In this document: positions 3 through 48,445 of the stretch, piece by piece | How the letters are laid out: every line of letters begins with the position of its first letter | Numbering within the stretch: position 1 is the stretch's first letter | Sequence record: ON529860.1 | DNA: 64,000 nt | Direction: 5' to 3' (one strand) | Program-made: the position numbers and the translations under genes | Notes under the pieces: generated by a model | Seen by the model: only the letters and a program-made list of their open reading frames with translations | The model's database searches: none | What the model was told of the DNA's origin: nothing

Positions 3-1076
3 GAGAACTCCGAGACCGCCGCCCAGCGCGTCGCCTCGTTCGACGAACTCCAGCAGCAACTGAAGTCGGTCCTCCAGGGCGCGGTGCGCACCATCCTGTC
101 GACCAACAAGCTGGAAGAGATCATGCAGGACCGGGCCAAGCTGGGCACCGAGTTCACCGCCGAGGTCAACCACCAGCTTCAGGAATGGGGCGTGACCACC
201 GTCAAGTCCATCGAGTTCATGGACATTCGCGACAGCAGCGGTTCGAAGGTCATCGCCAATATGATGGCGAAGGAGCAGTCGCGCATCGAAAAGGAAAGCC
301 GCATCACCGTCGCGGAAAACCTGCGCGAAGCCGAACTGAAGGAAATCGACGCCGACCGCGTCGTCGAGGTTCAGAAGCAGGACGCCCAGCAACAACTCGG
401 CATCCGCACCGCCGAAAAAGAACGCGCCGTCGGCATCGCCGATGAGCAGACGCGCCAGGAAGTCCTGCTGGAAAGCAAGCTGACCGCCGAGCGCCAGATG
501 GACGTCCAGAAGATCAACGACGTGAAGACGGCCGAGATCGCCAAGGACGTCGCCATCGTCAAGGCCGAGCAGGATCGCGAGGTCCTGGTGGTCAAGTCGG
601 AAGCCGAGAAGCGCCAGACGGTCATCGCAGCCGAGGCGCAGAAGGAGCGCACCGAGGTTGTCGCCAAGGGCGATCTTGCAGCGGCCCAGAACGAGGCCCT
701 GGGCTTGCAAGCGATCGGCGAGGCGAAGGCCAAGGCGGAAGAAGCCATCTTGATGGCGCCGGTCACCGCCCAGATCACCCTCGCCAAGGAGATCGGCGAG
801 AACCAGCCCTACCAGCAGTATCTGATCACGGTCGAGCAGATCAAGGCGGGCCAGGCGGTCGGCACCGAAATGGCTCAGGCCCTGAAGAGCGCCGACCTGA
901 AGGTCATCGCCAACTCGGGCGACGTCCAGTCGGGCGTGGGCGCGCTGGGCGGCATCCTGTCGCCGGCCGGCGGCACCGCGATCGCCGGCGCCCTGTCGGC
1001 CCTGTCGCAACTGCCCGAAGGCAAGGCCCTGGTGGACCGGCTCACCGGCGCGGACAAGGCGGCGACCACCGCCTGA
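3..1076 (+). CDS. SPFH/band-7/flotillin-like protein (5' truncated by window)
   Basis: Frame open from base 3. SPFH-type 'LQGAVRTIL..LEEIM..R..F..EV..QL.EWGV' followed by a long AEA-rich coiled-coil tail. Confidence 0.8.
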   Translation, partial: ENSETAAQRVASFDELQQQLKSVLQGAVRTILSTNKLEEIMQDRAKLGTEFTAEVNHQLQEWGVTTVKSIEFMDIRDSSGSKVIANMMAKEQSRIEKESRITVAENLREAELKEIDADRVVEVQKQDAQQQLGIRTAEKERAVGIADEQTRQEVLLESKLTAERQMDVQKINDVKTAEIAKDVAIVKAEQDREVLVVKSEAEKRQTVIAAEAQKERTEVVAKGDLAAAQNEALGLQAIGEAKAKAEEAILMAPVTAQITLAKEIGENQPYQQYLITVEQIKAGQAVGTEMAQALKSADLKVIANSGDVQSGVGALGGILSPAGGTAIAGALSALSQLPEGKALVDRLTGADKAATTA

Positions 1077-1177: not shown

Positions 1178-1588
1178 ATGACATTCGTTGCTGACCCTCT
1201 TGAACCGGCGATCAACTCCGTGACCAACGGCCAGATTCTCTGCGAGACCCTGCCGCCGTGCTTCCGGCTGACGTGGCTGGATCAGTCGTTCCACGACGCG
1301 CCTAAAGGCGCTGAGGCCGCGCCCTACCACCGGGCGCGCGACTTCAAGCATCTTGGCGGCGCGATCGCCTGGGCGCGCCGGAGGATTTTCCACGGAGAAG
1401 CGTTCGGCGACGTGATCGAACTGGTCCGCGTTGACCGCCGGCGCCTGAACGGCGTCTACGTCGAGGAGCCTTACGAGGCGCGCGACATCACCCTGGCGGG
1501 CTTCCTGCCCTGGGATCGGAAAAACTGGAGCGGGAGCCCCACCGAGGTGGTCCTTTCGCACCCCCACAAGAGGTGTATCTGGGAATGA
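1178..1588 (+). CDS. Hypothetical protein
   Basis: ORF with phage codon bias, ATGA overlap with the next gene. Confidence 0.65.
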   Translation: MTFVADPLEPAINSVTNGQILCETLPPCFRLTWLDQSFHDAPKGAEAAPYHRARDFKHLGGAIAWARRRIFHGEAFGDVIELVRVDRRRLNGVYVEEPYEARDITLAGFLPWDRKNWSGSPTEVVLSHPHKRCIWE

Positions 1589-2697: not shown

Positions 2698-2730
2698 ACC
2701 CAACCACATTCACACGAGGGGGAAATCTCC

Positions 2731-4158
2731 ATGGTCATTCGCGACACTGACGATCTGCCGAACCATCTGGCGCCGCTGCCCTACAACCTGATCGCCGATA
2801 CCGACAGCTACAAGCTGGGTCACTGGACGCTCTATCGGAAGGGCACGACCACCGTCTACAGCTACATCGAGCCGCGCGGCGGGCGCTACCCGGTGGTGAT
2901 GTTCGCCGGGCTCCAGAAGCTGCTCTACGAGAAGCTGGGCCAGCCCATCACCCGCGACCAGATCGAGGAGATGGCGAAGTTCGTGCCCGCGCACGGCTTC
3001 GAGTTCAACCGCGAGGGCTGGGAGATCATCCTGAACGAATACGACGGCAAGCTGCCGCTGCTGATCAAGGCCGTGCCCGAGGGCCTGGTCCTGCCCGTTC
3101 GCAACGCCCTGTTCACCATCGAAAACCTCGATCCGCGCCTGCCGTGGCTGACCTCCTACCTGGAGACGATGATCCTGCGCGACCTGTGGACGTCGTGCAC
3201 CATCGCCACGCGCATCTACCTGATGACGCAGCGCCTCAAGGGCCACTGGGAGCAGCACTCGGACAATCCCATGAGCCCCTTCGCCCTGCTCGACTTCTCG
3301 TCGCGCGGCACCATGGGCTATGACCACTCGGTCATGGGCGGCATCGCCTACCTGTTCCACTTCATGGGCTCGGACAACGTGCCGGCCGTGCGGGAAGCCA
3401 ACTACTACTACTTCGAAGAGATGTCGGCCTATTCGGTGCTGGCCGCAGAGCACTCGATCTCCTGCTCCTTCGGCCGCGACAACGACGACGACTACATCCG
3501 CAACTCGCTGGAGGTCGCCAAGCCGAACTCGCCGCTGTCGCTGGTCGGCGACACCTGGAACATCTTCAAGTTCGCCGAGAAGGTGGTCGCCAACCACAAG
3601 GACCTGATCATCAACAAGGGGATCAAGTTCGTCGCCCGTCCGGATTCTGGCGAGATCGCCGACGTCCTGCCGCCGGTCTTCACCACCCTGGCGAAGGGCT
3701 TCGGCACCGACCGCAACTCCAAGGGCAAGGACGTCATCCGCTACGGCGCCGCCGTCCTGCAAGGCGACGGCATGAACGAGCACTCCCACATGGTGCCGTT
3801 CCAGGTCGCCGACGCCCTGGGGCTGGCCCCGGACAGTGTGATCACCGCAGCCGGCGGCGGCCTGATGACCGCCGACCTGGACCGCGACACCATGAAGTGG
3901 GCGATGAAGGCCTCCGAGATGGTGATCGACGGCGAGCGCGTCGACATCTTCAAGGACCCGATCACCGATCCGGGCAAGCAGTCCAAGCGCGGCCGCTTCG
4001 CCCTGGTGCGCAATGAAGACGGCGAGTTCGCCACCATCAATCGCATCAACGACGCCGAGGACCGCGCCGACCTGCTGGAGCCGCGCTTCCTCAAGGGCGA
4101 CGTGATCAACGCCACCACCCTGGCCCAAGTGCGCGAACGCGTCTCGGCCCAACTCTAA
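2731..4158 (+). CDS. nadV: Nicotinamide phosphoribosyltransferase (NAMPT)
   Basis: TDSYKLGH, DFSSRG, AAEHS, RPDSG, LQGDG, KDPITDPGKQSKRG motifs. Adjacent to NMNAT. Confidence 0.92.
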   Translation: MVIRDTDDLPNHLAPLPYNLIADTDSYKLGHWTLYRKGTTTVYSYIEPRGGRYPVVMFAGLQKLLYEKLGQPITRDQIEEMAKFVPAHGFEFNREGWEIILNEYDGKLPLLIKAVPEGLVLPVRNALFTIENLDPRLPWLTSYLETMILRDLWTSCTIATRIYLMTQRLKGHWEQHSDNPMSPFALLDFSSRGTMGYDHSVMGGIAYLFHFMGSDNVPAVREANYYYFEEMSAYSVLAAEHSISCSFGRDNDDDYIRNSLEVAKPNSPLSLVGDTWNIFKFAEKVVANHKDLIINKGIKFVARPDSGEIADVLPPVFTTLAKGFGTDRNSKGKDVIRYGAAVLQGDGMNEHSHMVPFQVADALGLAPDSVITAAGGGLMTADLDRDTMKWAMKASEMVIDGERVDIFKDPITDPGKQSKRGRFALVRNEDGEFATINRINDAEDRADLLEPRFLKGDVINATTLAQVRERVSAQL

Positions 4159-32140: not shown

Positions 32141-35119
32141 GTGGCCCACATCGACTATGAGAACAACCTGTTCCTCGGACGCGGCACGTTCGAGGAGCGG
32201 GAAATCTTCCGCGATGTCCTGGGCAAGTTCCAGGGCTTCACCTTCTCCAAGGAATACGGCTGCTGGACGACCGGCGACGTCGTGATGGCCCAGGCGGTCA
32301 AGGGCGTGGTCTGGACCGACCGCGCCATGGCGCGTCTGCGCACCCTGCTGGAAGCCGCCAAGATCAGCGAAGAACTGTCGTGGCGATCGGATACGACCTA
32401 TGTGCCGCCGTCGCCGCCGGGGTTGAGTTACCTCCCCTACCAGCGCGCCGGCATCGAATACGCACTGATGCGCAAGGACACGCTGATCGCCGATCAGCCC
32501 GGCCTGGGCAAGATGGCGAGCGTCAATACGCCCGTACTGACCCCGTCTGGGTGGCGCCGTATGGGCGATCTGGCCGTGGGTGACGACGTGATCGCCGTTG
32601 ATGGTCAGTCCACGCGGGTCATCGGGGTCTATCCCCAAGGCATTCTGCCAAACTATCGGGTTCGATTCCGGGACGGCACGACGACCAACTGCGGCGCCGA
32701 CCATCTCTGGGCCGTCGGAAGCCCGACGCGTCGAAACCGCGCAAAAGCGATGGGCAGGCCAGACTACGAATACACGGTCAAGTCCCTTCAAGAACTGATG
32801 GACGGCGGGCTCACCTCGTCTCCCGACGGCGTCCGCGTGGGGGCGAAATGGTATGTGCCTCTGGTCGAGCCGGTCGCGCACCCCGCGCGGGACCTGCCGA
32901 TCGACCCCTACATTCTCGGCGTTCTCCTGGGCGACGGCGCCTTGACCTCCTGCGGCACCGGGTTCTCCAACCCGGACATCGACGCGGACATTCGCGACGA
33001 AGTCTCACGGCGCCTGCCCGACGGCTACCACCTGCGCGTGGACCGATCTTCGGGCTGCCCGCGCGGCATGATCGTATCGGAGACGCACAAGGTTCACGCG
33101 CTCAAGGCCGCGCTCCGTGACCTGGGGCTGAACGCCCTCAGCGGCGATCGCTTCATCCCTGAAGGCTATATCCTCGCCTCCGTCGAACAGCGGCTGAGCC
33201 TGCTGCGCGGGCTCATGGATACGGACGGCTCATCGAGCGGAAACCGGATCGCCTTCCACACGACGTCGCCCAGGTTGGCGGCGGGGGTGGCCGAACTCGT
33301 CCGCTCGCTGGGAGGCGTAGCGATCGAACGGTGGTATGACCGCGAGGCTGAGGGTAAGCCTGCCGAATGTCAGGTCAACGTGAAGATGGCGATCTGCCCC
33401 TTCTTCGCACGACGCAAGGCCCGCAACTGGTCACCCCAAAACCCGCGCCGATACATTCATGCCGTTGAGCGGATCGAGGACTGCGAGCAGGTCTGCATCG
33501 CGGTCGATCACCCTCGCCGGCTCTATGTCGCCGAGCACTACATCGTCACGCACAACACGATTCAGGCGATCGGCGTCCTGAACGCTGACGAGACCATCAA
33601 CAGCGCCCTGTTCATCGTACCGGCCTCGCTGAAGATCAACTGGCACCGCGAGATCGACAAGTGGATGCTGCCCAACCTGACCTTCGGCATCGCCGAGGCC
33701 AAGCGGATCGACAAGGAGTTGATCGGTTACGCCAAGGCCTATGAATATGTCGAGGACGGGGTCTACAAGACCGGGGCCAAGGCGGGCCAGCCCAAGTTCA
33801 AGAAGGTCGAGGTCCAGGGCAAGCCCAAGTATCGCAACGTCGAGACGTCCGACTACTGGCCCGACACCGACGTCGTCATCATCAACTACGACATCCTGGA
33901 GCGCTTCGCGGTCCAGATCAAGGAACGCAACTGGGATTACCTAGTCTGTGACGAATGCCATGCGCTGAAGAGCGCCGCCACCGGCCGCACCCTGTTCGTC
34001 CTCGGCGGAAAGCAGGAGTTCAACAAGGCCCAGCGCGACAAGCGCAAGGCCGAAGGCCTGTCGTCGCGACCGATCTGGCATCGCGCCATCGACGCCAACC
34101 GTCGCGTCTTCCTGTCCGGCACGCCGATGATGTCGCGGCCGGTGGAGTTGTGGCCCGTCGCCCACGCCTTCAACCCCTCCGACCTGGGTCGCGACTATGT
34201 CGACTTCGCCTACCGCTACTGCGCCGCCTGGACGACCGCCTACGGTCTGGACGTTTCGGGCGCCTCGAACCTGGAGGAGTTGGGCCAGAAGGCCCGCGCC
34301 AGCTTCATGGTGCGCCGGCTGAAACGCGAGGTGCTGCCGGAACTGCCGCCCAAGCGCCGCATCGTCGTCACCTTGGATAGCCCTGAAATCCGCGAACTGG
34401 TCGCCCGTGAAGACGAACTGGCCCAGGCGTTGCGCCTCTACGAGAACGTCACCCTCAACAAGGGCGTGGTGGTCGACGAGATCAACCACGGCATCCAGAT
34501 CGTCAACCACATGACGCGGATGGGGATGACGGACGAGTTCGATCCCGACAATCCGAACTGGCGCTCGCTCGACCTCGACTACGCCGCCTCGGTCGCCGGT
34601 CTGGAGCCGCCGGCCGTCGCCATCCTGTTCGAGGAAATGGCGAAGGTGCGCCGCGATCTCGGGCTCGCCAAGCTGAGCGCGCTCAAGCCGTGGATGGATG
34701 ACTTCCTGGAGGGCGGCGAGAAGCTGCTGATGTTCGCCTACCACTCCGACGTGGTCAAGGCGCTGGCCCTGGCGGCCGAGAAGTGGAACCCGGCGGTGAT
34801 CTGGGGCGGCACGCCCCTGCACAAGCGCCAAGGCGAGGTCGACAAGCTGCAAGGCGACGAAAGCTGCCGCCTGTTTATCGGCAACATCCAGGCGGCCGGC
34901 GTCGGCTTCACCATGACGCGCGCCCATGACGTCGCCTTCGCCGAGGGCGACTGGGTGCCCAGCCAGATTGAGCAGTGTGAGGACCGCGCCTGCCGCATCG
35001 GCCAGACGGCCGAGAAGATCAACAGCTACTTCCTGGTCGCCAACGGCTCGCTCGATTCCCGCATCGCCCAGGCCGCCAAGGCCAAGGAAGACAACATCAA
35101 CCTGGCGATGGGGGCGTGA
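32141..35119 (+). CDS. Snf2/SWI2-like SF2 helicase, intein-interrupted
   Basis: YQ..G, ADQPGLGK|TIQA, DECH, LSGTP, RRLK.EV, QCEDRACRIGQ. Confidence 0.9.
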   Translation: MAHIDYENNLFLGRGTFEEREIFRDVLGKFQGFTFSKEYGCWTTGDVVMAQAVKGVVWTDRAMARLRTLLEAAKISEELSWRSDTTYVPPSPPGLSYLPYQRAGIEYALMRKDTLIADQPGLGKMASVNTPVLTPSGWRRMGDLAVGDDVIAVDGQSTRVIGVYPQGILPNYRVRFRDGTTTNCGADHLWAVGSPTRRNRAKAMGRPDYEYTVKSLQELMDGGLTSSPDGVRVGAKWYVPLVEPVAHPARDLPIDPYILGVLLGDGALTSCGTGFSNPDIDADIRDEVSRRLPDGYHLRVDRSSGCPRGMIVSETHKVHALKAALRDLGLNALSGDRFIPEGYILASVEQRLSLLRGLMDTDGSSSGNRIAFHTTSPRLAAGVAELVRSLGGVAIERWYDREAEGKPAECQVNVKMAICPFFARRKARNWSPQNPRRYIHAVERIEDCEQVCIAVDHPRRLYVAEHYIVTHNTIQAIGVLNADETINSALFIVPASLKINWHREIDKWMLPNLTFGIAEAKRIDKELIGYAKAYEYVEDGVYKTGAKAGQPKFKKVEVQGKPKYRNVETSDYWPDTDVVIINYDILERFAVQIKERNWDYLVCDECHALKSAATGRTLFVLGGKQEFNKAQRDKRKAEGLSSRPIWHRAIDANRRVFLSGTPMMSRPVELWPVAHAFNPSDLGRDYVDFAYRYCAAWTTAYGLDVSGASNLEELGQKARASFMVRRLKREVLPELPPKRRIVVTLDSPEIRELVAREDELAQALRLYENVTLNKGVVVDEINHGIQIVNHMTRMGMTDEFDPDNPNWRSLDLDYAASVAGLEPPAVAILFEEMAKVRRDLGLAKLSALKPWMDDFLEGGEKLLMFAYHSDVVKALALAAEKWNPAVIWGGTPLHKRQGEVDKLQGDESCRLFIGNIQAAGVGFTMTRAHDVAFAEGDWVPSQIEQCEDRACRIGQTAEKINSYFLVANGSLDSRIAQAAKAKEDNINLAMGA
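32513..33556 (+). mobile_element. LAGLIDADG intein (348 aa) in helicase Walker A
   Basis: GK|MASVNTPVLTP...HLW...LGVLLGDG...LRGLMDTDG...QVCIAV...IVTHN|T. Confidence 0.9.
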
Positions 35120-35991: not shown

Positions 35992-36078
35992 TGGAGGTGC
36001 GACCTGGACTCGAACCAGGATGAGGGTTTCCCCTACGGCTTATGAGGCCGCTGCCTATTCCAGCCGCGCCACCGCACC
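35992..36078 (-). tRNA. tRNA, anticodon CAU, long variable arm, U73, encoded CCA
   Basis: GGTGCGG/TCGCACC acceptor, GCGGC-CTCATAA-GCCGT, variable arm AGGG-GAAA-CCCT, CCTGG-TTCGAGT-CCAGG. Confidence 0.85.
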
Positions 36079-36782: not shown

Positions 36783-37118
36783 GGGGAACTTTCTGTTCCA
36801 AGGCCCGGCAAGCCGGGGTTCCCCATACCCGTGGTCGCCCTTAGGCGGCCAGGAGGACTCGTTCGCCAGCGGCGAAGTTGTCGTTGGAAGCTTCGACAGT
36901 TGTCAAAGTTGGATCGTGAGCGGCCTAAACCGCCATGCAGACCCTAGCACTCGCCATTCAATCCCGTCACCAACGTCAATCGATACTGTTCGGCCCCTCA
37001 AACCGCGCCCGTCTCCCATCATAGGAGGGGGATTGGTGGAGCCGACGGGATTCGCACCCGTGTCTTGCCCGTCTGTTTCGTTCTCTCTGCTTCGGACCGA
37101 AGTCCTCCGCGCGACGAA
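36783..37118 (-). ncRNA. ssrA: Circularly permuted (two-piece) tmRNA
   Basis: T arm plus CGGCTCC-A-CCA (37034-44) precedes GGGGCCG (36991-97) with a G3:U70 pair. Tag ORF 36891-36841 = ASNDNFAAGERVLLAA*. Confidence 0.92.
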
Positions 37119-37171: not shown

Positions 37172-37258
37172 TGGAGGGACGGGTGAGAATCGAACTCACG
37201 CCAGGCTTTCGCCAGGAGGATTTGCAGTCCCCCGCCTTACCACTCGGTCCACCGTCCC
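37172..37258 (-). tRNA. tRNA-Cys(GCA) with long variable arm
   Basis: GGGACGG/CCGTCCC-U73-CCA, GGGGA-CTGCAAA-TCCTC, variable arm GGC-GAAA-GCC, GTGAG-TTCGATT-CTCAC. Confidence 0.88.
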
Positions 37259-39410: not shown

Positions 39411-39444
39411 AAGAAAAACGGCCCCGATCCGAAGATCGGGGCCG
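39411..39444 (-). terminator. Terminator downstream of Ro60
   Basis: CGGCCCCGATC-TTCG-GATCGGGGCCG-TTTTTCTTT on minus strand. Confidence 0.9.
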
Positions 39445-39502
39445 CATCGTTCTTTACGCGACAGCGTAATTCCGCGAACGGATTACGAATACCCGTATTG
39501 GA

Positions 39503-40888
39503 TCAGCCGCCGACGAGGCCGTCGTCGAACTCCATCGCCTCGACCTCACGGATATAGCGCAGGACGCTCTCCGAGAAGCCGTCGATGTGGACCCATCCGT
39601 TGCCGTAGCCGATGCCATTCGCATAGCTGGCGACGTTGATCATATAGGCCTTGCCGGCCTTGGGCGCCGGCAGTCGCCCGCCGCCCATGCCGCTGCTCAG
39701 CGTTCCCGACGCCTGTTCGTCGGTGATGACGATCAGGCGGTCGCAGGCGAACTGACGGTTCACCACGTCCACGGCCTGGGCCAGGGCGGTGCCCTGGTGC
39801 GGCTGCGAACGGATCACCGCCTCGACGCCCGCCATGCCCTTGCGGGCCGGGACCTCGACCAGACCGTTGGAGAAGGTCACGACGCGCACGTCGCCCGGCA
39901 GGATCGCCGCCAGCGTCGCCGCCGCATCCATCCGGGTCAGGTCCGACTTTCCGGACAGTTTTTGCCGCATGGAGTAGGAGACGTCGACCATGACCACGGT
40001 CGAACCCTTCAAGGGTTCGGCCTGATCAATCGTCGCCACGAGGGCGTCGTCCAGCGCCCGCTCGAACGAGGGCGCATAACGCGCCGCCGCCGTGAAGCGG
40101 AAGGGCAGGACGCGGTCCGCGCCCTTGCGCGCGCGGATCGCAGCATTGACCAGATCGCGGTCGACGCCGGCCTGATCCATGTTGCGCAGGTTGCGCAGCA
40201 GGGCGAGGTAGCCCAGCTTTCCGTCGGCCAGCAGACGCGTGAACGTCGCCTTCTTGTCGGCGCCGCCCGACAGGGCGACTTCCCAGGTGTCGGGCGCCGT
40301 CAGTTCATTGTCGACCAGCTTCTTGTAGAGGGCCTCGCGGTCGTCGTTCGCCGGCTTGGCGTGCGCCAGGAACAGAACGTCGCGCAGGCGCACGGACTTG
40401 GCCCGGTCGTACTTGGCGATCTGATAGGCGTCGAAGTTGCCGAAGGCCAGCGACAGCCCCTTCTTCACCTGAGCGGACAGCGGCGCCTTCTTGCCGTCGG
40501 CGCGCACCGGGTTGAGCGCCCAGTAGAGGGCCAGGAACTCGCTCAGTTCATCGGCGCGTTGGATGACGCGGGCGATGGTCAGCGACACCAGGGCCGAGCC
40601 GGACCCGCGTTGGGCCAGAACGACGAGCAGCAGAAGGGGGACGTGACGCAGCTTGGCGTCCTCACGCGCTTCAATCGCGATCTGGGCGAGGGTCTCGACC
40701 GGAACTTCCTTGGCGAGGCTCTGGATACGGTCGGCGATCGACACGCCGCTCTCGTAGAAATTGTCTTCCCACAGCAGGCAGGACATGACCGACCGGCGCA
40801 GGGCCTGGGTCTTGGTCATCCGATCGGCCGGTGCGCCTTCATGGGTGCGCGCGGTGGTCGTCTTGGGCTTTGCGTTGATCGACGCCAT
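39503..40888 (-). CDS. rsr: Ro60/TROVE-domain RNA-binding protein with vWA C-terminus
   Basis: RSVMSCLLWEDNFYE, LRHVPL, QRADEL, YQIAKY, TWEVALS, YLALLRNLRNM, DVSYSM (MIDAS), VITDEQ. AGGAG RBS. Confidence 0.93.
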   Translation of the reverse strand: MASINAKPKTTTARTHEGAPADRMTKTQALRRSVMSCLLWEDNFYESGVSIADRIQSLAKEVPVETLAQIAIEAREDAKLRHVPLLLLVVLAQRGSGSALVSLTIARVIQRADELSEFLALYWALNPVRADGKKAPLSAQVKKGLSLAFGNFDAYQIAKYDRAKSVRLRDVLFLAHAKPANDDREALYKKLVDNELTAPDTWEVALSGGADKKATFTRLLADGKLGYLALLRNLRNMDQAGVDRDLVNAAIRARKGADRVLPFRFTAAARYAPSFERALDDALVATIDQAEPLKGSTVVMVDVSYSMRQKLSGKSDLTRMDAAATLAAILPGDVRVVTFSNGLVEVPARKGMAGVEAVIRSQPHQGTALAQAVDVVNRQFACDRLIVITDEQASGTLSSGMGGGRLPAPKAGKAYMINVASYANGIGYGNGWVHIDGFSESVLRYIREVEAMEFDDGLVGG

Positions 40889-40910
40889 AATGGGTCCCCT
40901 CCTCGTCTGG

Positions 40911-41088
40911 TCAAGCGACCAAGAGGTCGGGGAGGAACAAGCACGAGCCCGGTTCATCCGGTGCGTCTACCACTTCCGCCACCTGCACCAGAGATGCAGG
41001 CCAGGACTTGAACCTGGATACCCTTGACGGGCGCCGGCTCCAGCGAAGTATAGGCTCGTTACGCCATCCCCGACCTCGCGGTCAGTGA
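40911..41088 (-). ncRNA. Y-RNA-like element D: permuted class-II (Leu-like) tRNA mimic
   Basis: Terminal stem GAGGTCGGGGA/TCCCCGACCTC, variable arm, T arm CCAGG-TTCAAGT-CCTGG, looped acceptor CCTGCAT/GTGCAGG, D arm GCG-GAAGTGGTAGA-CGC. Confidence 0.8.
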
Positions 41089-41090
41089 AC

Positions 41091-41233
41091 TCCGGCGCTC
41101 TGGTAGGAAGGCGGGGGAACATGCGCGACCGGATGCGGGATCGAACCGCGAGACCGGGGGTTTGAATCCCGGCTTATCAACCAGCGATGTAACCGACCGC
41201 TCTCACCACCCGCCCACCAACCAGGGCGCCGGA
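41091..41233 (-). ncRNA. Y-RNA-like element C: non-permuted tRNA mimic within a long stem
   Basis: TCCGGCGC/GCGCCGGA closing helix. Core 41125-41200 with 8-bp acceptor, T arm GCGG-TTCGATC-CCGC, loop ATTCAAA, no CCA. Confidence 0.65.
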
Positions 41234-41241
41234 AAAGCAGA

Positions 41242-41396
41242 AACATGAAGGCGGCGGGGGAATAAGCGACCCCACTCTTTTTTAGGCGTGCTACCGTTAC
41301 ACCAAACGCCGCTAGGCGACGTTGCGGAATCGAACCGCTCATCCCGCTCCACATGCGATGAAAGTGACGTCTATCGCCACCCACCGCCTTCATGTT
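41242..41396 (-). ncRNA. Y-RNA-like element B (YrlA-type)
   Basis: 13-bp stem AACATGAAGGCGG/CCGCCTTCATGTT, T arm, looped acceptor, D arm GTGT-AACGGTA-GCAC. Confidence 0.8.
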
Positions 41397-41404
41397 GTTG
41401 GCTC

Positions 41405-41579
41405 AGAAGCGTGTGGTGGATCGACAGGGGAACCGGCGGAAAGGCGCCGTTTGGACTATCGTTCTACCAACTGAACTACCGCCGCGCCCGAAGGTGCGCC
41501 GAGTGGGATTCGAACCCACGACCTACAGTTTGCGAAGAAGGCCTCTCCCTCACCACCTGTCGATCCGCCACACGCTTCT
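41405..41579 (-). ncRNA. Y-RNA-like element A (YrlA-type)
   Basis: 24-bp terminal stem with one mismatch. ACTGT-AGGTC-GTGGG-TTCGAAT-CCCAC, acceptor capped by cUUCGg, D arm GTTC-AGTTGGTA-GAAC, ATAGT. Confidence 0.88.
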
Positions 41580-41763
41580 CAACCCTGTCCTAGACAGACC
41601 CGAGGACCCAACCCCGGACGAGGAACCGAAGTTCCCCGGCGGGATCAGGATCGTCCGGGAATAGGCGGAACCGAGAGCGGGGCCAAGGCCCCCACGTACC
41701 AAAAACGAAGAACTCGGTCCCTGTCGCCACGGACAATGACTGTGTGCCCGATCCCGGTTCAGG

Positions 41764-41780
41764 TGTCAACAACAACGGCA
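41764..41780 (-). promoter_or_regulatory. Promoter (-35 region) of the Y-RNA/Ro60 unit
   Basis: TGCCGT-N5-TTGACA. The -10 element is not clear. Confidence 0.55.
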
Positions 41781-41801
41781 GAAAAAGTTGAGATTACCGG
41801 C

Positions 41802-41835
41802 AAAAAGAAAACCCCCGGCCGAAGCCAGGGGTTTC
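41802..41835 (-). terminator. Terminator after repressor gene
   Basis: AAACCCC..GGGGGTTTTCTTTTT on minus strand. Confidence 0.75.
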
Positions 41836-41867
41836 CACGACATCTGACGTCGGCGGGGGTTCCAGGG

Positions 41868-42647
41868 TCAGACGCCGATCTTGCCCACCACCTTGCCCAG
41901 CAGGGTGAGGCTCTTGGCCGGAACGTCGCGGTGGCTGCGACGGTCCTGATCGAAAATGCGGTAGGGGCCGTTGGCGCTGGGGCGGGTCAGGTGGTCGACG
42001 CGGACCTCGCCGTCCAGGGCGTAGACAAAGGTGGCGCCGGTGGGGGTGGGGGTCGCCTCGCGTTGGACGAAGGCCATTTCGCCCGGTTGCAGGTTCTCGG
42101 CGAAATCGTCGATTCGGATCAGGGCGAGGGATTCGGTCGGCACGTCGAACTGGGTTTGCAGCCAATCGGCGAACATGGGCCAGGCGCGGGCGGCGGTGAA
42201 TCCCTTGCGGACGCCGAAGTATTCCACCTCTTGCAGGGTGACGAGGTCGTCGATCCCGTCGGCCAGCCACTGCGGCGCGGTTTGCAGCGCCTCGGCCAGA
42301 ATGTCTTCCTTCTGGGTGCCGAACGCCAGCCATTCCGGCGAACATTGCAGCGCCTCGGCCAGGGTCACGATCTTGTCAATGTCCGGCAAGACGTCGCCGG
42401 TCTCATACATGCAGTAGGCCGAGCGGGACAGCACCTTCCACTCGCCCTGGCGTTTGTTGAAGAACCTGATCTTGGCCGCCACTTCGGCCTGGGACATGTC
42501 CAGTTCCATGCGGCGCGACGTCATGCGCTCCTGCATGGTGGTGGGATTATCGATCATCCCCTTGAGCGAACCCTTGCGATGCATGGGTCCCTTCTCCTTG
42601 ACAACGGCAGACTTGGTCGTGCGGGTCGCTTCCAGCGTGCTCGGCAT
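41868..42647 (-). CDS. XRE/CI-like repressor (HTH plus S24-like C-domain)
   Basis: RRMELDMSQAEVAAK..YETG..P..I..LA.AL..SPEWL.FG. beta-rich C-domain. Confidence 0.8.
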   Translation of the reverse strand: MPSTLEATRTTKSAVVKEKGPMHRKGSLKGMIDNPTTMQERMTSRRMELDMSQAEVAAKIRFFNKRQGEWKVLSRSAYCMYETGDVLPDIDKIVTLAEALQCSPEWLAFGTQKEDILAEALQTAPQWLADGIDDLVTLQEVEYFGVRKGFTAARAWPMFADWLQTQFDVPTESLALIRIDDFAENLQPGEMAFVQREATPTPTGATFVYALDGEVRVDHLTRPSANGPYRIFDQDRRSHRDVPAKSLTLLGKVVGKIGV

Positions 42648-45540: not shown

Positions 45541-48366
45541 TTACCCTTCGCACGCGATGCAGGTGCTGTCGTCGAGCGGGTTGGCGCTGAGGCCGTTCGA
45601 CGGCGGCGCCTCGTAGGCCTCGATCACCTTGCGCTCCACCTTGGAGTTGGTGTTCTCGGCGCGACGCGGCGTCGTCGAACGGTAATAGTAGAGGCTCTTC
45701 AGCGGCGCGCCCTCGCCGTCCGGGTCCCAGGCCATGTAGTGGACCTCGGTCGCATAGCCGGCGTCGGCGTCGTGCGGGAAGGCCAGGTTGATCGACTGCG
45801 CCTGGTCGATTTCACCCTGACGGTCACGGGCGTGCTGGACGACCCAGCGCATATCCAGTTCCGTGAAGGTCTTGAACACGGCGCGGACGTGATCCCAGTC
45901 GTCGGCGTCCACGAAGGTGCCGAAGATGTCGTAGACCGCCGGCTCGCCCAGCTTCTCGATACGCACGCCCAGGTTCTGGATCGACCCCTCGTCCGCGACG
46001 ATGGCCTTCCAGACCTCGGCCGTATCCAGGTTCCGCTTGCGCAGTTCACGGATCAGGAAGGGGTTCTTGACCGCGAAGGACCCCGACAGGGTCTTCTGGA
46101 GGTAGGCGTTGGCGCGCCAGGGTTCGACCGACGGCGAGGTGTTGCCGCACAGGATCGAGGACGAGGCGTTCGGCGCGATCGCCAGCTTGTGGGCGAAGCG
46201 TTCGCCGGTGCCGGCCATGTCCGGAGCCTCGCCGCGCTCGGCGCCCAGGACCAGCGAAGCCTGATCGGCGTCCGCCCGGATGTGGCGGAAGATCAGCTTG
46301 TTGATCTCGCGCGCCGCATTCGATTCGAACGCGATCATCTTGCGCTGGAGCAGGGCGTGGAAGCCGAGCAGGCCCAGACCCACCGACCGCTCCTGGGTCG
46401 CCGAATAGACCGCATAGGCCAGTTCCGGCGGGGCGTCGTTGATGAAGACCTCCAGGCAGTTGTCAAGCATCCGCATCAGGTCAGGGATGAACTCCGGCAC
46501 CGTGCTCCACTCGGGATACTTCTCGCCGTTCACCGACGACAGGCAGCAGACGGCGGTGCGCTTGGCGCCCGTGTCGTCGCGGCCGGTCGCCAGGGTGATT
46601 TCGGTGCAGTTGCCGGTCAGCAGGCCGTTGAAGACGCCGCGCGACCGCTGGGATTCGGTGAAGCAGAAGGTGTCCGACTTCCAGGCGAGAGGCTGGACGT
46701 CGACGACGACCGGCAGAGGGGTCAGCTTGCCGATGTGATCTTCCGGCAAACGTGACTCCTGCTTGACCAGCAGGCCCTTGTTCGCCAGGCGATGCACGTC
46801 ATAGACGTTCAGCATGAAGCCGGCGCCGGTGTCGGTGATGCGCACGCGCGGGGTCAGACCGGCCTCCAGGGCCGCCAGGCGCATTTCGCGCACCAGGTCG
46901 GCGTCGGTCGTGGCGACCGACAGGTAATCCCGGAACCCGGTGGCGTCCGCCTGGTCCAGTTCGATCCACTCGCCCGCCGCATCCATGACGCCGGCGAACC
47001 AGGCCAGACGCGCCTCTTGCGACCAGCGCAGGGGCGCGCGGCCCGACGGGATCGTCTGGGGTTCGAAGCGGATGTAGAGACCTTCCGCGACCGTGTCGGC
47101 CTGGGAGTCCACCGACACCGACAACAGCCGCTTCAGGACGCCCACGTCGGTCTCCCGCGCGAACACCGACAGGCGGTTCTTGTCCTCGAAACCGGTGAAG
47201 GTCGCATAGCCCGCCGTGTAGGCGGTGTCGATCGAATGGGCGGCGTCGTTCGGGTTGACGACGGTCGGATGGTTGGCCGGCTCCAGGCGCAGGCCCGGCG
47301 TCAGTTCGCCGGCGCGTTTCAGGCCTTCGGTGGTGTAGAACTTGTGGTGGGGCGTGCAGTCCAGATGCGAACCGTCTTCAAACCAGACGCGCACCAGTTC
47401 CTGGGCCGTGCCGGTCTGCTCGACGGTGGTGACGCTCCAGTCCTCGCCGTTCCAGACCTCGACCTGCCGGCCCTTGAGGGCGCCGATCGGCGCATAACCG
47501 TCGCGGGTCAGGATTTCCGTCTGCGGCGTGACGCACAGGTTGGACTGATTGACGCGCAGGCCCTTGGCCTTCTGCGTCGCCGGCAGGGCGGCGTTGGCGT
47601 GATCGACGAAGAACAGATAGGGCTCGCCCGTCTGCTTGCGGGTCTCGATGATCAGGCGCCACAGAGCGCGGGCGTCCACCGTCTCGGTGACCGCCTTGGT
47701 CTTCGGGTCGACCAGATCGAACGTGCCTTCATCGCCGACGGCCCGCATGAACTCGTCGGTGATGCAGACGGCGTTGTGCAGGTTGGTGAACTTGCGGTTC
47801 TCGTCGCCGCCCGTCGGCTTGCGACCGGTGATGAACTCGACCACCTCGGGGTGGCTGATGTCCAGGTAGGCCGCGTAGGAGCCGCGACGGGTGCCGCCCT
47901 GGCTGACCGACAGGATCAGGCGGTCGACGGTGGCGATGAAGGGGACGACGCCGGTCGAGGCCGAGCCCTTGGAGGTCTTGGCGCCGTTCGAGCGCAGGCC
48001 GCCCCAGTAGCCGCCGACGCCGCCGCCGACCGACGACAGCCAACCCGTCTCGGCCCAGTGATCGAAGATGCCGGCGCGGCTGTCTTCGGCGGTGGTCAAG
48101 AAGCAGGAGATCGGCAGGCCGCGATCGGTGCCGCCGTTCGACAGCAGCGGCGTAGCGAACATGAACCAGCCCTGGGACACGTAGTCGTACAGGCGCTGGG
48201 CATGGGCTTCATCGTCGGCGAAGGCGGCCGAGGCGCGCGCGAAGGCCTCCTGAGGCGAGGTCTCGCCAGGGATCAGGTAGCGGTCCCGGAACGTCTGAAG
48301 GGTGAATTCATCGAACACCTCGTCGCGCGTGAGATTGAGACGAAGAGACGAGCGATCGACAGACAT
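45541..48366 (-). CDS. nrdA: Class I RNR alpha subunit, intein-interrupted
   Basis: ATP.L.N.G..GLPISCF, GGT.RGS, SNL|C.EI, APNASSS, KSLYY, C-terminal CIACEG. Confidence 0.93.
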   Translation of the reverse strand: MSVDRSSLRLNLTRDEVFDEFTLQTFRDRYLIPGETSPQEAFARASAAFADDEAHAQRLYDYVSQGWFMFATPLLSNGGTDRGLPISCFLTTAEDSRAGIFDHWAETGWLSSVGGGVGGYWGGLRSNGAKTSKGSASTGVVPFIATVDRLILSVSQGGTRRGSYAAYLDISHPEVVEFITGRKPTGGDENRKFTNLHNAVCITDEFMRAVGDEGTFDLVDPKTKAVTETVDARALWRLIIETRKQTGEPYLFFVDHANAALPATQKAKGLRVNQSNLCVTPQTEILTRDGYAPIGALKGRQVEVWNGEDWSVTTVEQTGTAQELVRVWFEDGSHLDCTPHHKFYTTEGLKRAGELTPGLRLEPANHPTVVNPNDAAHSIDTAYTAGYATFTGFEDKNRLSVFARETDVGVLKRLLSVSVDSQADTVAEGLYIRFEPQTIPSGRAPLRWSQEARLAWFAGVMDAAGEWIELDQADATGFRDYLSVATTDADLVREMRLAALEAGLTPRVRITDTGAGFMLNVYDVHRLANKGLLVKQESRLPEDHIGKLTPLPVVVDVQPLAWKSDTFCFTESQRSRGVFNGLLTGNCTEITLATGRDDTGAKRTAVCCLSSVNGEKYPEWSTVPEFIPDLMRMLDNCLEVFINDAPPELAYAVYSATQERSVGLGLLGFHALLQRKMIAFESNAAREINKLIFRHIRADADQASLVLGAERGEAPDMAGTGERFAHKLAIAPNASSSILCGNTSPSVEPWRANAYLQKTLSGSFAVKNPFLIRELRKRNLDTAEVWKAIVADEGSIQNLGVRIEKLGEPAVYDIFGTFVDADDWDHVRAVFKTFTELDMRWVVQHARDRQGEIDQAQSINLAFPHDADAGYATEVHYMAWDPDGEGAPLKSLYYYRSTTPRRAENTNSKVERKVIEAYEAPPSNGLSANPLDDSTCIACEG
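46609..47535 (-). mobile_element. Intein (309 aa) at the NrdA active-site cysteine
   Basis: NL|CVTPQT...CTPHHKF...GLLTGN|CTEI. Confidence 0.9.
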
Positions 48367-48445
48367 AGGCGTTTCCGAAGAAAAGGCTCTGCCCAGCAAA
48401 AAGTGCTGTCTAAACAGAGCCTTAGAGATTTAGTGAAAGGTGGTC

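What the first reader, a model, noticed from the sequence alone, without database searches (positions are those of the whole stretch)
40911..41088. Permuted tRNA mimic on a class-II, tRNA-Leu-like scaffold
Seen: element D keeps a long variable arm (CCC-GTCAA-GGG), a Leu-type D arm GGCGGAAGTGGTAGACGC and T arm CCAGG-TTCAAGT-CCTGG. Its acceptor is closed by a loop and its anticodon stem (CCGG/CCGG) opens into the Y stem. The YrlA modules I know mimic class-I tRNA. Inference: Y-like RNAs were made repeatedly by permuting different tRNA genes, and this one could engage LeuRS or other class-II-specific factors.
Basis: partly seen in the sequence, partly recalled or inferred. Interest (0 to 1): 0.72.

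Follow-up and report, generated by a model that had tools for sequence, protein, structure and literature searches.

The report
Phage Y RNA with tRNA-Leu-derived head
This is the last of five Y RNAs sitting in a row just upstream of the Ro60/Rsr gene of a Brevundimonas jumbo phage. Its tRNA-like head is a rearranged copy of a long-armed tRNA-Leu, which makes it an unusual variant of a known RNA class and not a new kind of element.

Summary
On the minus strand at 40923-41077 there is a 155-nt stem-closed RNA. Its core, read 5'->3', is an anticodon-stem strand, a long variable arm, a T arm, a closed 7-bp acceptor hairpin, a tRNA-Leu-type D arm and the other anticodon-stem strand.

- **tRNA test:** After re-permutation ARAGORN calls an 88-nt class-II tRNA; none of 500 shuffles is called.
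- **Structure:** RNAalifold on four phage orthologues returns the same fold, with 13 of 44 pairs compensated.
- **Isotype:** Every annotated tRNA under the 60 listed phage BLAST matches is tRNA-Leu. The best match is phiCbK tRNA-Leu(GAG).
- **Context:** The window is Brevundimonas phage Papperlapapp. The element lies 34 nt upstream of rsr (Ro60, TROVE+vWA). It is the last of five tandem Y RNAs that share one stem and bulge motif. Caulobacter chromosomes carry the same kind of array.

Permuted tRNA mimicry, class-II-like long variable loops and an origin from dimeric tRNAs are all published for YrlA. Charging by LeuRS is unlikely: the acceptor is closed and position 73 is C or G, not A. The CcrColossus orthologue looks more like tRNA-Ser.

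What is new is the isotype-specific class-II D arm and the traceable tRNA-Leu ancestry. I rate it a new variant of a known kind, of moderate interest.

The parts
40923..41077 (-). Whole element D: a Y RNA with a permuted class-II tRNA-like head, measured from P1 5' strand to P1 3' strand. A weaker outer extension reaches about 40915-41085.
41067..41077 (-). P1 5' strand (GAGGUCGGGGA) of the closing Y stem
   Evidence: 11 bp, with compensatory changes in the CcrColossus/CcrPW orthologues
40923..40933 (-). P1 3' strand (UCCCCGACCUC)
41062..41066 (-). UGGCG motif: an invariant bulged U, then GG pairing with the CC of the 3' UUCC. This is the candidate Rsr-binding bulged helix, shared by all five elements.
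   Evidence: It resembles the GNCGAAN0-1G motif of Chen 2014, which is inference.
40934..40937 (-). UUCC motif on the 3' side, partner of the UGG bulged helix
41053..41059 (-). P2 5' strand (ACGAGCC)
   Evidence: pairs with 40943-40949, with several double changes among orthologues
40943..40949 (-). P2 3' strand (GGCUCGU)
41044..41049 (-). ACUUCG motif. The motif or a close variant (CUUCG) is present in most Y elements of these phages, and in Caulobacter chromosomal Y RNAs. Its role is unknown.
41034..41037 (-). CCGG, the equivalent of the anticodon-stem 3' strand (tRNA positions 40-43)
41020..41032 (-). Long variable arm: a 4-bp stem (G.U plus CCC/GGG) and the loop GUCAA
41001..41017 (-). T arm CCAGG-UUCAAGU-CCUGG
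   Evidence: 3 of 5 pairs are compensated in CcrColossus/CcrPW
40982..41000 (-). Closed acceptor hairpin: 7 bp with a 5-nt loop (CUCUG). The discriminator-equivalent base is C at 40993.
   Evidence: The stem sequence differs in each lineage, but the length stays at 7 bp.
40963..40981 (-). U8 and G9 plus the tRNA-Leu-type D arm (3-bp stem GCG/CGC, loop GAAGUGGUAGA)
40958..40961 (-). CCGG, the equivalent of the anticodon-stem 5' strand (positions 27-30)
40949..40957 (-). AUGAA-CCGG, a remnant of the second tRNA copy's anticodon loop and stem. AUGA matches loop positions 32-35 of phiCbK tRNA-Leu(GAG).
   Evidence: Not conserved in Marchewka or CcrColossus.
39503..40888 (-). rsr, the Ro60 orthologue (TROVE + vWA), 461 aa. 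GenBank calls it 'RNA-binding protein'.
41092..41232 (-). Y element C. Its head is a non-permuted tRNA-like cloverleaf.
41244..41394 (-). Y element B
41402..41580 (-). Y element A, with a canonical class-I YrlA-type head. Rfam YrlA gives 27 bits at 41457-41527.
41653..41734 (-). Y element 0: a short Y-like RNA without a tRNA-like head
41807..41836 (-). Intrinsic terminator of the upstream HTH gene. It marks the start of the Y-array/rsr unit. A TTGACA box follows at 41764-41769.
   Evidence: The promoter is inference from conservation.
39418..39445 (-). Intrinsic terminator after rsr

Best explanation
Element D is a YrlA-class Y RNA of Brevundimonas phage Papperlapapp. It is the rsr-proximal member of a five-element Y-RNA array that probably shares a transcription unit with rsr.

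**Shown**
- The architecture, the covariation and the tRNA-Leu ancestry.
- Its two ends pair into a long stem with a conserved bulged helix (stem, U, GG ... CC, stem). All five elements carry this helix.
- Its other end is an L-shaped tRNA mimic, written in permuted order: variable arm, T arm, closed 7-bp acceptor, D arm.
- The head is class II: a 3-bp D stem, an 11-nt D loop and a 13-nt variable arm.
- The head derives from a head-to-tail pair of tRNA-Leu(GAG)-like genes. The 3' two-thirds of one copy is joined to the 5' third of the next.

**Inferred**
- The bulged helix is the likely docking site for the phage Ro60/Rsr ring.
- By analogy with characterised Y RNAs, the stem holds Rsr while the tRNA-like elbow recruits or competes for a tRNA-binding partner. 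Candidates are RNase P, TruB, Dus enzymes, or an unknown effector. The RNA would thus gate or tether Rsr during infection.
- It is not a decoding tRNA and is probably not aminoacylated.
For: - **Position:** It lies directly upstream of a TROVE+vWA gene on the same strand. Terminators are found only before the array and after rsr.
- **Shared Y module:** The same stem/UGGYG...UUCC module occurs in five tandem elements, with 7-8 of 8 flanking pairs each. Element A has a canonical YrlA head.
- **Bacterial counterpart:** The same motifs and array organisation lie upstream of rsr in a Caulobacter chromosome, whose Rsr is 65% identical to the phage protein in the best tblastn segment.
- **Structure:** The consensus fold returns the full permuted cloverleaf, with 13 of 44 pairs doubly compensated. 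The tertiary Levitt pair 15:48 switches from A:U to G:C between lineages.
- **tRNA call:** ARAGORN calls the re-permuted form a class-II tRNA and of 500 shuffles.
- **Leu ancestry:** Every annotated tRNA under the 60 listed phage BLAST matches is tRNA-Leu, and the T-acceptor-D stretch aligns across tandem tRNA-Leu junctions. D shares exact 10-, 9- and 15-mers with phiCbK tRNA-Leu(GAG), running into the anticodon loop.
- **Model check:** A model built from the element scores a real tandem tRNA-Leu junction at 62 bits.
- **Literature:** YrlA as a permuted tRNA mimic, long variable loops, the dimeric-tRNA origin, and Y RNAs in CcrColossus are all published.
Against: - There is no expression, end-mapping or Rsr-binding data for this phage.
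- Rfam YrlA does not match D even at E <= 10. It also fails its gathering score on element A and on every Caulobacterales and phage element tested, so that test is uninformative here.
- The D arm departs from the near-invariant YrlA D arm.
- For the single sequence, the proposed fold (-66.1 kcal/mol) is 10 kcal/mol above the MFE.
- The effector is unknown.
Confidence: 0.8

Rival explanations
1. It is a permuted pre-tRNA or a two-piece tRNA-like molecule. RNase P and 3' trimming open the acceptor hairpin, as happens with M. smegmatis YrlA. The ends may also be joined, giving a CCA-ended, possibly chargeable, tRNA-Leu-like RNA.
For: - The acceptor is exactly 7 bp in all lineages.
- Marchewka has G-CCA and CcrColossus/CcrPW have C-CCA directly after the acceptor 3' strand.
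- Joining the 3' CCGG-AUGA to the 5' GAG-CCGG would recreate the loop AUGAGAG of phiCbK tRNA-Leu(GAG).
- M. smegmatis YrlA, which has a 7-bp stem, is cut by RNase P and receives CCA.
Against: - Papperlapapp itself has C-UCU, not CCA.
- The discriminator is C or G, whereas all six real tRNA-Leu genes examined in Papperlapapp and phiCbK have A73. From my own knowledge, A73 is the main LeuRS identity element.
- There is no anticodon loop.
- No bacterial enzyme is known that joins such ends.
- The loop remnants are not conserved in CcrColossus.
- The phage already has three tRNA-Leu genes.
Confidence: 0.07
2. It acts mainly in cis, as an Rsr-binding leader of the rsr mRNA (autoregulation), and not as a free small RNA.
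For: - It ends about 34 nt before the rsr start codon, and no terminator lies between them.
- It carries the same putative Rsr-binding helix as the other elements.
Against: - The rsr-proximal slot holds different head types in related phages: class I with an anticodon arm in Kikimora, and element 7 in CcrColossus.
- The head shows covariation, including a tertiary pair, which a mere binding site would not need.
- Characterised Y RNAs next to rsr are released as small RNAs.
Confidence: 0.08
3. It is a decaying relic of tandem tRNA-Leu genes with no function of its own.
For: - Its core aligns to a head-to-tail tRNA-Leu dimer.
- Leftover anticodon-loop pieces are present.
Against: - Compensatory changes keep every helix intact in three lineages.
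- The Levitt pair covaries.
- Acceptor length is held at 7 bp while its sequence turns over completely.
- It is embedded in the conserved Y module.
Confidence: 0.05

Closest known systems
YrlA (Y RNA-like A) of Salmonella Typhimurium and other bacteria (Chen et al. 2014, PMC4201824; Wang et al. 2018, bioRxiv 10.1101/312249; Rfam RF02553)
   Same: - Encoded next to rsr.
- The ends pair into a stem that carries the Ro60-binding region.
- The head has the order variable region, T arm, closed acceptor, D arm, with the anticodon-stem equivalent running into the Y stem.
- The Levitt pair covaries.
- Long variable loops are reported for many YrlAs.
   Different: - The D arm is a class-II tRNA-Leu type: a 3-bp GCG/CGC stem and an 11-nt loop. 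The near-invariant YrlA form is UAGCUCA..GGUAGAGC with a 4-bp stem.
- The T loop is UUCAAGU.
- The anticodon stem and variable-arm base are still recognisably those of one tRNA gene.
- No Rfam YrlA match.
Mycobacterium smegmatis YrlA
   Same: - A 7-bp acceptor-like stem.
- The published RNA is cut by RNase P and then receives CCA. Orthologues of D encode N-CCA after the acceptor strand.
   Different: - Processing has not been tested here.
- Papperlapapp lacks the CCA.
- The head here is class II.
Tandem tRNA-Leu genes of Dolichocephalovirinae phages (phiCbK L007:1354-1623; Papperlapapp L396:3405-3684)
   Same: - The junction between two such genes has the same order and much of the same sequence as the core of D.
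- This matches the dimeric-tRNA origin model of Sim and Wolin 2018, as cited.
   Different: - D lacks the outer halves and the anticodon loops.
- Its two acceptor strands pair with each other.
- It is enclosed in a Y stem.
Circularly permuted tRNA genes of Cyanidioschyzon merolae (Soma et al. 2007, as cited)
   Same: - The 3' half precedes the 5' half.
- The acceptor starts out as a closed hairpin.
- The anticodon stem is formed by the transcript ends.
   Different: - Those are matured into real tRNAs by splicing endonuclease and ligase.
- Here there is no anticodon loop, and the discriminator is wrong for Leu.
Y-RNA arrays upstream of rsr in Caulobacterales chromosomes (for example Caulobacter sp. 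KR2-114, L398:1200-1940)
   Same: - Several tandem elements carrying the UGGYG, CUUCG and UUCC motifs.
- An Rsr protein 61-65% identical to the phage protein.
   Different: - Bacterial heads found by my scan all have the canonical D arm, and most have a 5-nt variable loop.
- None is Leu-type or class-II in its D arm.

Membership tests
YrlA / bacterial Y RNA | Encoded adjacent to an rsr (Ro60, TROVE) gene | tested here: met
   The TROVE+vWA ORF at 39503-40888 starts 34 nt downstream on the same strand.
YrlA / bacterial Y RNA | The 5' and 3' ends pair into a long stem that carries the Ro60-binding motif (GNCGAAN0-1G near the 5' end) | tested here: inconclusive
   The stem and a conserved bulged helix are present and covary. 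The motif here is GGCGUAAC, which is similar to the published motif but not identical.
YrlA / bacterial Y RNA | tRNA-like module in the order T arm, closed acceptor-like stem-loop, D arm, with tRNA tertiary-pair nucleotides | tested here: met
   U8, A14, G18G19, U54-A58 and the covarying 15:48 pair can be read directly from A1 and A2.
YrlA / bacterial Y RNA | Highly conserved YrlA D-stem and T-stem sequences (UAGCUCA...GAGC type) | tested here: not met
   D has the tRNA-Leu type GCG-GAAGUGGUAGA-CGC. Of the 34 Rsr-linked modules detected in bacteria and phages, 29 carry the canonical UAG(C/U)UCA...GA(G/A)C type. The exceptions are the 3 D-type elements and 2 others, L019 and L444.
YrlA / bacterial Y RNA | Reaches the Rfam RF02553 gathering score (69 bits) | tested here: not met
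   D gives no match at E <= 10. The threshold is also missed by element A (27 bits) and by all CcrColossus, Kikimora and Caulobacterales elements, so it does not discriminate in this clade.
YrlA / bacterial Y RNA | Bound by Rsr; modified by TruB and DusA | not testable with these tools
   Needs co-immunoprecipitation and modification mapping.
Class-II tRNA / tRNA-Leu | Cloverleaf with a long variable arm and a tRNA-Leu-type D arm and T loop | tested here: met
   Met after re-permutation only. Every annotated tRNA under the 60 listed BLAST matches is tRNA-Leu. The best of 32 phage tRNAs is tRNA-Leu(GAG).
Class-II tRNA / tRNA-Leu | Anticodon loop, and a free acceptor end with A73-CCA | tested here: not met
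   There is no anticodon loop. The acceptor is closed by CUCUG and position 73 is C. The real phage tRNA-Leu genes have A73-CCA.
Circularly permuted tRNA gene (matured to a tRNA) | A processing motif at the paired ends that regenerates an anticodon loop | tested here: inconclusive
   The loop halves AUGA and GAG are present in this phage but are degenerate in CcrColossus. No enzyme is known for this in bacteria.

The most novel reading that the evidence does not exclude
In these jumbo phages the heads of Rsr-bound Y RNAs are repeatedly overwritten from the phage's own tandem class-II tRNA genes. The head is Leu-like in the Papperlapapp group and Ser-like in CcrColossus/CcrPW. The resulting RNAs would act as isotype-class-specific decoys or tethers. 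Alternatively, after RNase P opening, they would act as two-piece CCA-ended tRNA-like molecules. Either way they would couple Rsr to class-II tRNA-binding proteins, or to host tRNA-directed defences, during infection.
Probability: 0.1. Interest if true: 0.7.

Novelty: new variant of a known kind. Interest (0 to 1): 0.42.

Why it matters
Y RNAs of the YrlA type are thought to have arisen from dimeric tRNA transcripts, but the known examples have generic, highly conserved D and T arms that hide their ancestry. This element still carries the D arm, anticodon stem, variable-arm base and part of the anticodon loop of one identifiable phage tRNA-Leu(GAG) lineage. Relatives of the phage keep the matching tandem tRNA-Leu genes. 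That makes it a concrete intermediate for the dimeric-tRNA model.

It also shows that the near-invariant YrlA elbow sequence is not obligatory, which bears on what the unknown YrlA effector recognises. Finally, it gives a tractable phage-host pair, with five different Y-RNA heads beside one Rsr, for asking what Ro60-Y RNPs do during infection.

Tried and rejected
- **Rfam.** No YrlA hit for D. The family threshold is missed by every element of this clade, so absence says little.
- **Pattern ACTTCG..GGARCCGGCG in metagenome and viral contigs.** The pattern was too unspecific.
- **Pattern 'T loop ... tRNA-Leu D arm' in viral contigs.** Most hits were ordinary tandem tRNA-X/tRNA-Leu pairs. Complementary acceptor strands alone do not separate closed hairpins from duplicated tRNA-Leu genes, so ARAGORN was needed. 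Only one of these loci, L043, has an rsr relative nearby.
- **ARAGORN isotype of the re-permuted RNA.** I rejected this as evidence, because the anticodon loop was my own insertion.
- **Single-sequence MFE.** It pairs ACUUC with the D loop GAAGU. That pairing is lost in Marchewka, so I rejected it in favour of the covariation-supported fold.
- **tRNAscan-SE isotype models.** Not available. As a substitute I used BLAST against annotated phage tRNAs and local alignment to 32 phage tRNAs.
- **The 2020 Annual Review on bacterial Ro60.** It could not be read.

Full report
**Where the window comes from.** Window 39500-41900 is 100% identical to Brevundimonas phage vB_BpoS-Papperlapapp (ON529860.1, 356,874 bp, Dolichocephalovirinae). 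Domovoi and Kabachok are 99% identical, Marchewka and Bambus 91%, Kikimora and Gurke 77%. Caulobacter phages CcrColossus and CcrPW match in the protein-coding part only. GenBank annotates nothing between the 'RNA-binding protein' gene and the upstream HTH gene.

**The observation.** On the minus strand, 40923-41077 reads as follows:
- an 11-bp closing stem P1;
- UGGCG;
- a second helix P2;
- ACUUCG;
- CCGG;
- a variable arm (CCC-GUCAA-GGG, plus a G.U pair);
- the T arm CCAGG-UUCAAGU-CCUGG;
- a 7-bp hairpin CCUGCAU/GUGCAGG closed by 5 nt;
- U and G;
- the D arm GCG-GAAGUGGUAGA-CGC;
- A, then CCGG;
- the return strands of P2 and P1.

The stretch folds better than all 200 shuffles (z = -3.5). I joined the 5' acceptor strand through CCGGA to GCCGG through the 3' acceptor strand, using an arbitrary 7-nt loop. 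ARAGORN calls the result an 88-nt class-II tRNA for this phage and for Marchewka. It calls none of 500 shuffles and does not call the native order. The isotype ARAGORN prints comes from my inserted anticodon and is not evidence.

**Structure from comparison.** Orthologues exist in Marchewka and Bambus, and as the sixth of seven elements in CcrColossus and CcrPW. RNAalifold on the four distinct sequences returns P1, the bulged U with GG/CC, P2, CCGG/CCGG, the variable arm, the T arm, the acceptor hairpin and the 3-bp D stem. It finds 44 pairs, 13 of them with changes on both sides. Specific points:
- Three of five T-stem pairs are compensated.
- The acceptor sequence differs completely in the three lineages, yet its length stays at 7 bp.
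- Positions 15 and 48 switch together from A:U in the Brevundimonas phages to G:C in the Caulobacter phages. This is the tertiary Levitt pair, whose covariation was also noted for YrlA.
- For the single sequence, the cloverleaf is 10 kcal/mol above the MFE. The MFE alternative is not kept in Marchewka.

**What it is.** The gene that starts 34 nt downstream (39503-40888) has TROVE and vWA domains, so it is an Ro60/Rsr orthologue. Relatives occur in 73 phage records. They also occur, at 59-65% identity in the best tblastn segment, in Caulobacter, Asticcacaulis and Phenylobacterium genomes.

The 980-nt spacer upstream of rsr holds five tandem elements: Y0 41653-41734, A 41402-41580, B 41244-41394, C 41092-41232 and D. 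Each is closed by a stem that continues through a bulged U and a GG/CC step, in the form stem|UGGYG ... UUCC|stem. Element A has a canonical class-I YrlA head, with a partial Rfam YrlA match of 27 bits. Intrinsic terminators lie only before the array and after rsr.

A Caulobacter chromosome carries the same kind of array, with the same UGGCGUAG, CUUCG and UUCC motifs, upstream of its rsr. D is therefore a Y RNA of the YrlA class. Y RNAs in CcrColossus have been reported before.

**Is it tRNA-Leu-like?** BLAST of the native core against 50,697 phage genomes gave three kinds of match besides the orthologues:
- The D-arm half hits annotated tRNA-Leu genes in dozens of unrelated phages (31 nt at 87-90% identity). 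No other isotype appears among the listed rows.
- The stretch T arm, acceptor, D arm aligns at 76% across the junction of two adjacent tRNA-Leu genes in phiCbK-like phages.
- CcrColossus element 7 also matches.

Among 32 tRNAs of phiCbK and Papperlapapp, the best match is phiCbK tRNA-Leu(GAG), with 60 of 78 positions identical. D shares with it the exact strings GCCGGCGCCC, GTGGCGGAA and TGGTAGACGCACCGG, followed by ATGA of the anticodon loop. Papperlapapp has three tandem tRNA-Leu genes of its own, with spacers of 9-10 nt.

A covariance model built from the core scores a genuine tandem tRNA-Leu junction at 62 bits, canonical YrlA heads at 19-39 bits and CcrColossus element 7 at 46 bits. As a control, element A hits tRNAs of many isotypes, and B and C hit none. 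The core of D is therefore the middle of a head-to-tail tRNA-Leu(GAG)-like dimer. That is the published dimeric-tRNA origin model for YrlA.

**Limits of the Leu reading.**
- The CcrColossus/CcrPW orthologue keeps the flanks, the CCGG stem and the variable arm. Its D loop (GAGUGGCCAAA) and T arm, however, are nearer to tRNA-Ser. Its best non-self BLAST match spans a tandem tRNA-Ser junction, and its best local score is to Papperlapapp tRNA-Ser(CGA). What is conserved is the class-II architecture, not Leu identity.
- The base at the discriminator position is C, G or C in the three lineages, whereas all six real tRNA-Leu genes examined have A73. From my own knowledge, A73 is the main LeuRS identity element. 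With a closed acceptor as well, leucylation is unlikely.
- Marchewka and CcrColossus/CcrPW encode CCA just after that base, but Papperlapapp does not. This could be a relic of the tRNA 3' end. It could also hint at opening by RNase P, as reported for M. smegmatis YrlA.

**How unusual it is.** The literature already describes YrlA as a circularly permuted tRNA mimic with a closed acceptor. It also states that many YrlAs have long variable loops like class-II tRNAs, and proposes dimeric tRNA origins, possibly multiple.

In my sample, 34 permuted modules were detected in 29 Rsr-linked viral contigs, four related phage genomes and 48 bacterial rsr loci. Of these, 29 have the canonical D arm UAG(C/U)UCA..GGUAGA(G/A)C. 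Wherever the stem could be placed, the variable loop is 5 nt, with exceptions of 12 nt in L399 and 25 nt in two Moraxella MAGs. The tRNA-Leu or class-II D arm with a 15-16-nt variable arm occurs only in the Papperlapapp group and in CcrColossus/CcrPW. Kikimora and Gurke lack it.

tRNA-Leu-type closed-acceptor modules do occur in tRNA clusters of unrelated viral contigs, with no rsr in the fetched stretch. Examples are L095 and L149, which keep A73-CCA and a long variable arm. I did not resolve what those are.

**Mechanism.** The architecture, covariation, ancestry and gene context are shown. The rest is inferred from characterised Y RNAs: the P1 bulged helix binds the outer face of the Rsr ring, and the tRNA-like elbow engages a tRNA-binding protein, gating or tethering Rsr. 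The partner is unknown. Rivals are a processed two-piece or permuted pre-tRNA, a cis-acting rsr leader, and a dead relic. I judge them less likely, for the reasons given under each.

**Verdict.** This is a new variant of a known kind, of moderate interest. Its main value is as a traceable intermediate for the tRNA-dimer origin of Y RNAs.

Noticed in passing
window 36841-37096 (-): A permuted (two-piece) tmRNA gene encoded by the phage (Rfam RF04321, 60 bits against a threshold of 47).
   Followed up: no
window 35992-36078 (-) and 37172-37258 (-); also L007:1163-1347: tRNA-Met(CAU) and tRNA-Cys(GCA) of 87 nt have a class-II shape, with a long variable arm and a Ser/Tyr-like D arm, and U at position 73. 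phiCbK has 87- and 91-nt tRNA-Lys of the same kind. Which amino acid they accept is an open question.
   Followed up: partly
window 32141-35119 (+): A SNF2-family helicase ORF of 992 aa has a LAGLIDADG_3 domain at aa 349-397, upstream of the matched SNF2 (aa 470-614) and Helicase_C (aa 856-954) domains. This suggests an intein or an inserted homing endonuclease.
   Followed up: no
window 45541-48399 (-): In the ribonucleotide reductase large subunit, the barrel domain matches in two stretches across aa 98-729, which suggests an insertion.
   Followed up: no
L003 2959-3033 (Kikimora), L004 2942-3016 (Gurke), L005 4620-4687 (CcrColossus): The GenBank features 'tRNA-Ser' and 'tRNA-Gln' lie inside Y-RNA elements upstream of rsr and are probably mis-calls. 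The Kikimora and CcrColossus element-5 type keeps a whole anticodon-arm-like hairpin (GCU or GUU) ahead of the T arm.
   Followed up: partly
L005 3900-5010 (-) and L398 1200-1940 (+): CcrColossus has seven tandem Y-like elements upstream of rsr. Caulobacter sp. KR2-114 has about five, with the same motifs. In CcrColossus element 3, ACCA follows the acceptor 3' strand, and a spacer hairpin precedes the next acceptor strand.
   Followed up: partly
L095 6051-6133 (-), L149 about 640-760 (+), L137 about 2700-2830 (+), L068 7558-7631 (+), L156, L143, L084: tRNA-Leu-type D arm modules with closed acceptors occur in unrelated IMG/VR contigs, several of them inside tRNA gene clusters (L095, L068, L143), with no rsr in the fetched stretch. 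L095 and L149 keep A73-CCA and a long variable arm. The element following the module in L095 has an exact GNCGAANG motif. L068 looks like tRNA-like modules nested in one another.
   Followed up: partly
L043 about 1300-1500 (-): About 380 nt downstream of a distant rsr homologue, a tRNA-Leu-like gene carries an insertion of about 60 nt where the anticodon loop should be.
   Followed up: no
window 41044-41049 and equivalents in every element: The ACUUCG / UCUUCG motif is conserved in most Y elements of these phages and of Caulobacterales, whatever the head type. In some elements it forms the 5' strand of an anticodon-arm-like hairpin, and in others it is unpaired. Its role is unexplained.
   Followed up: partly
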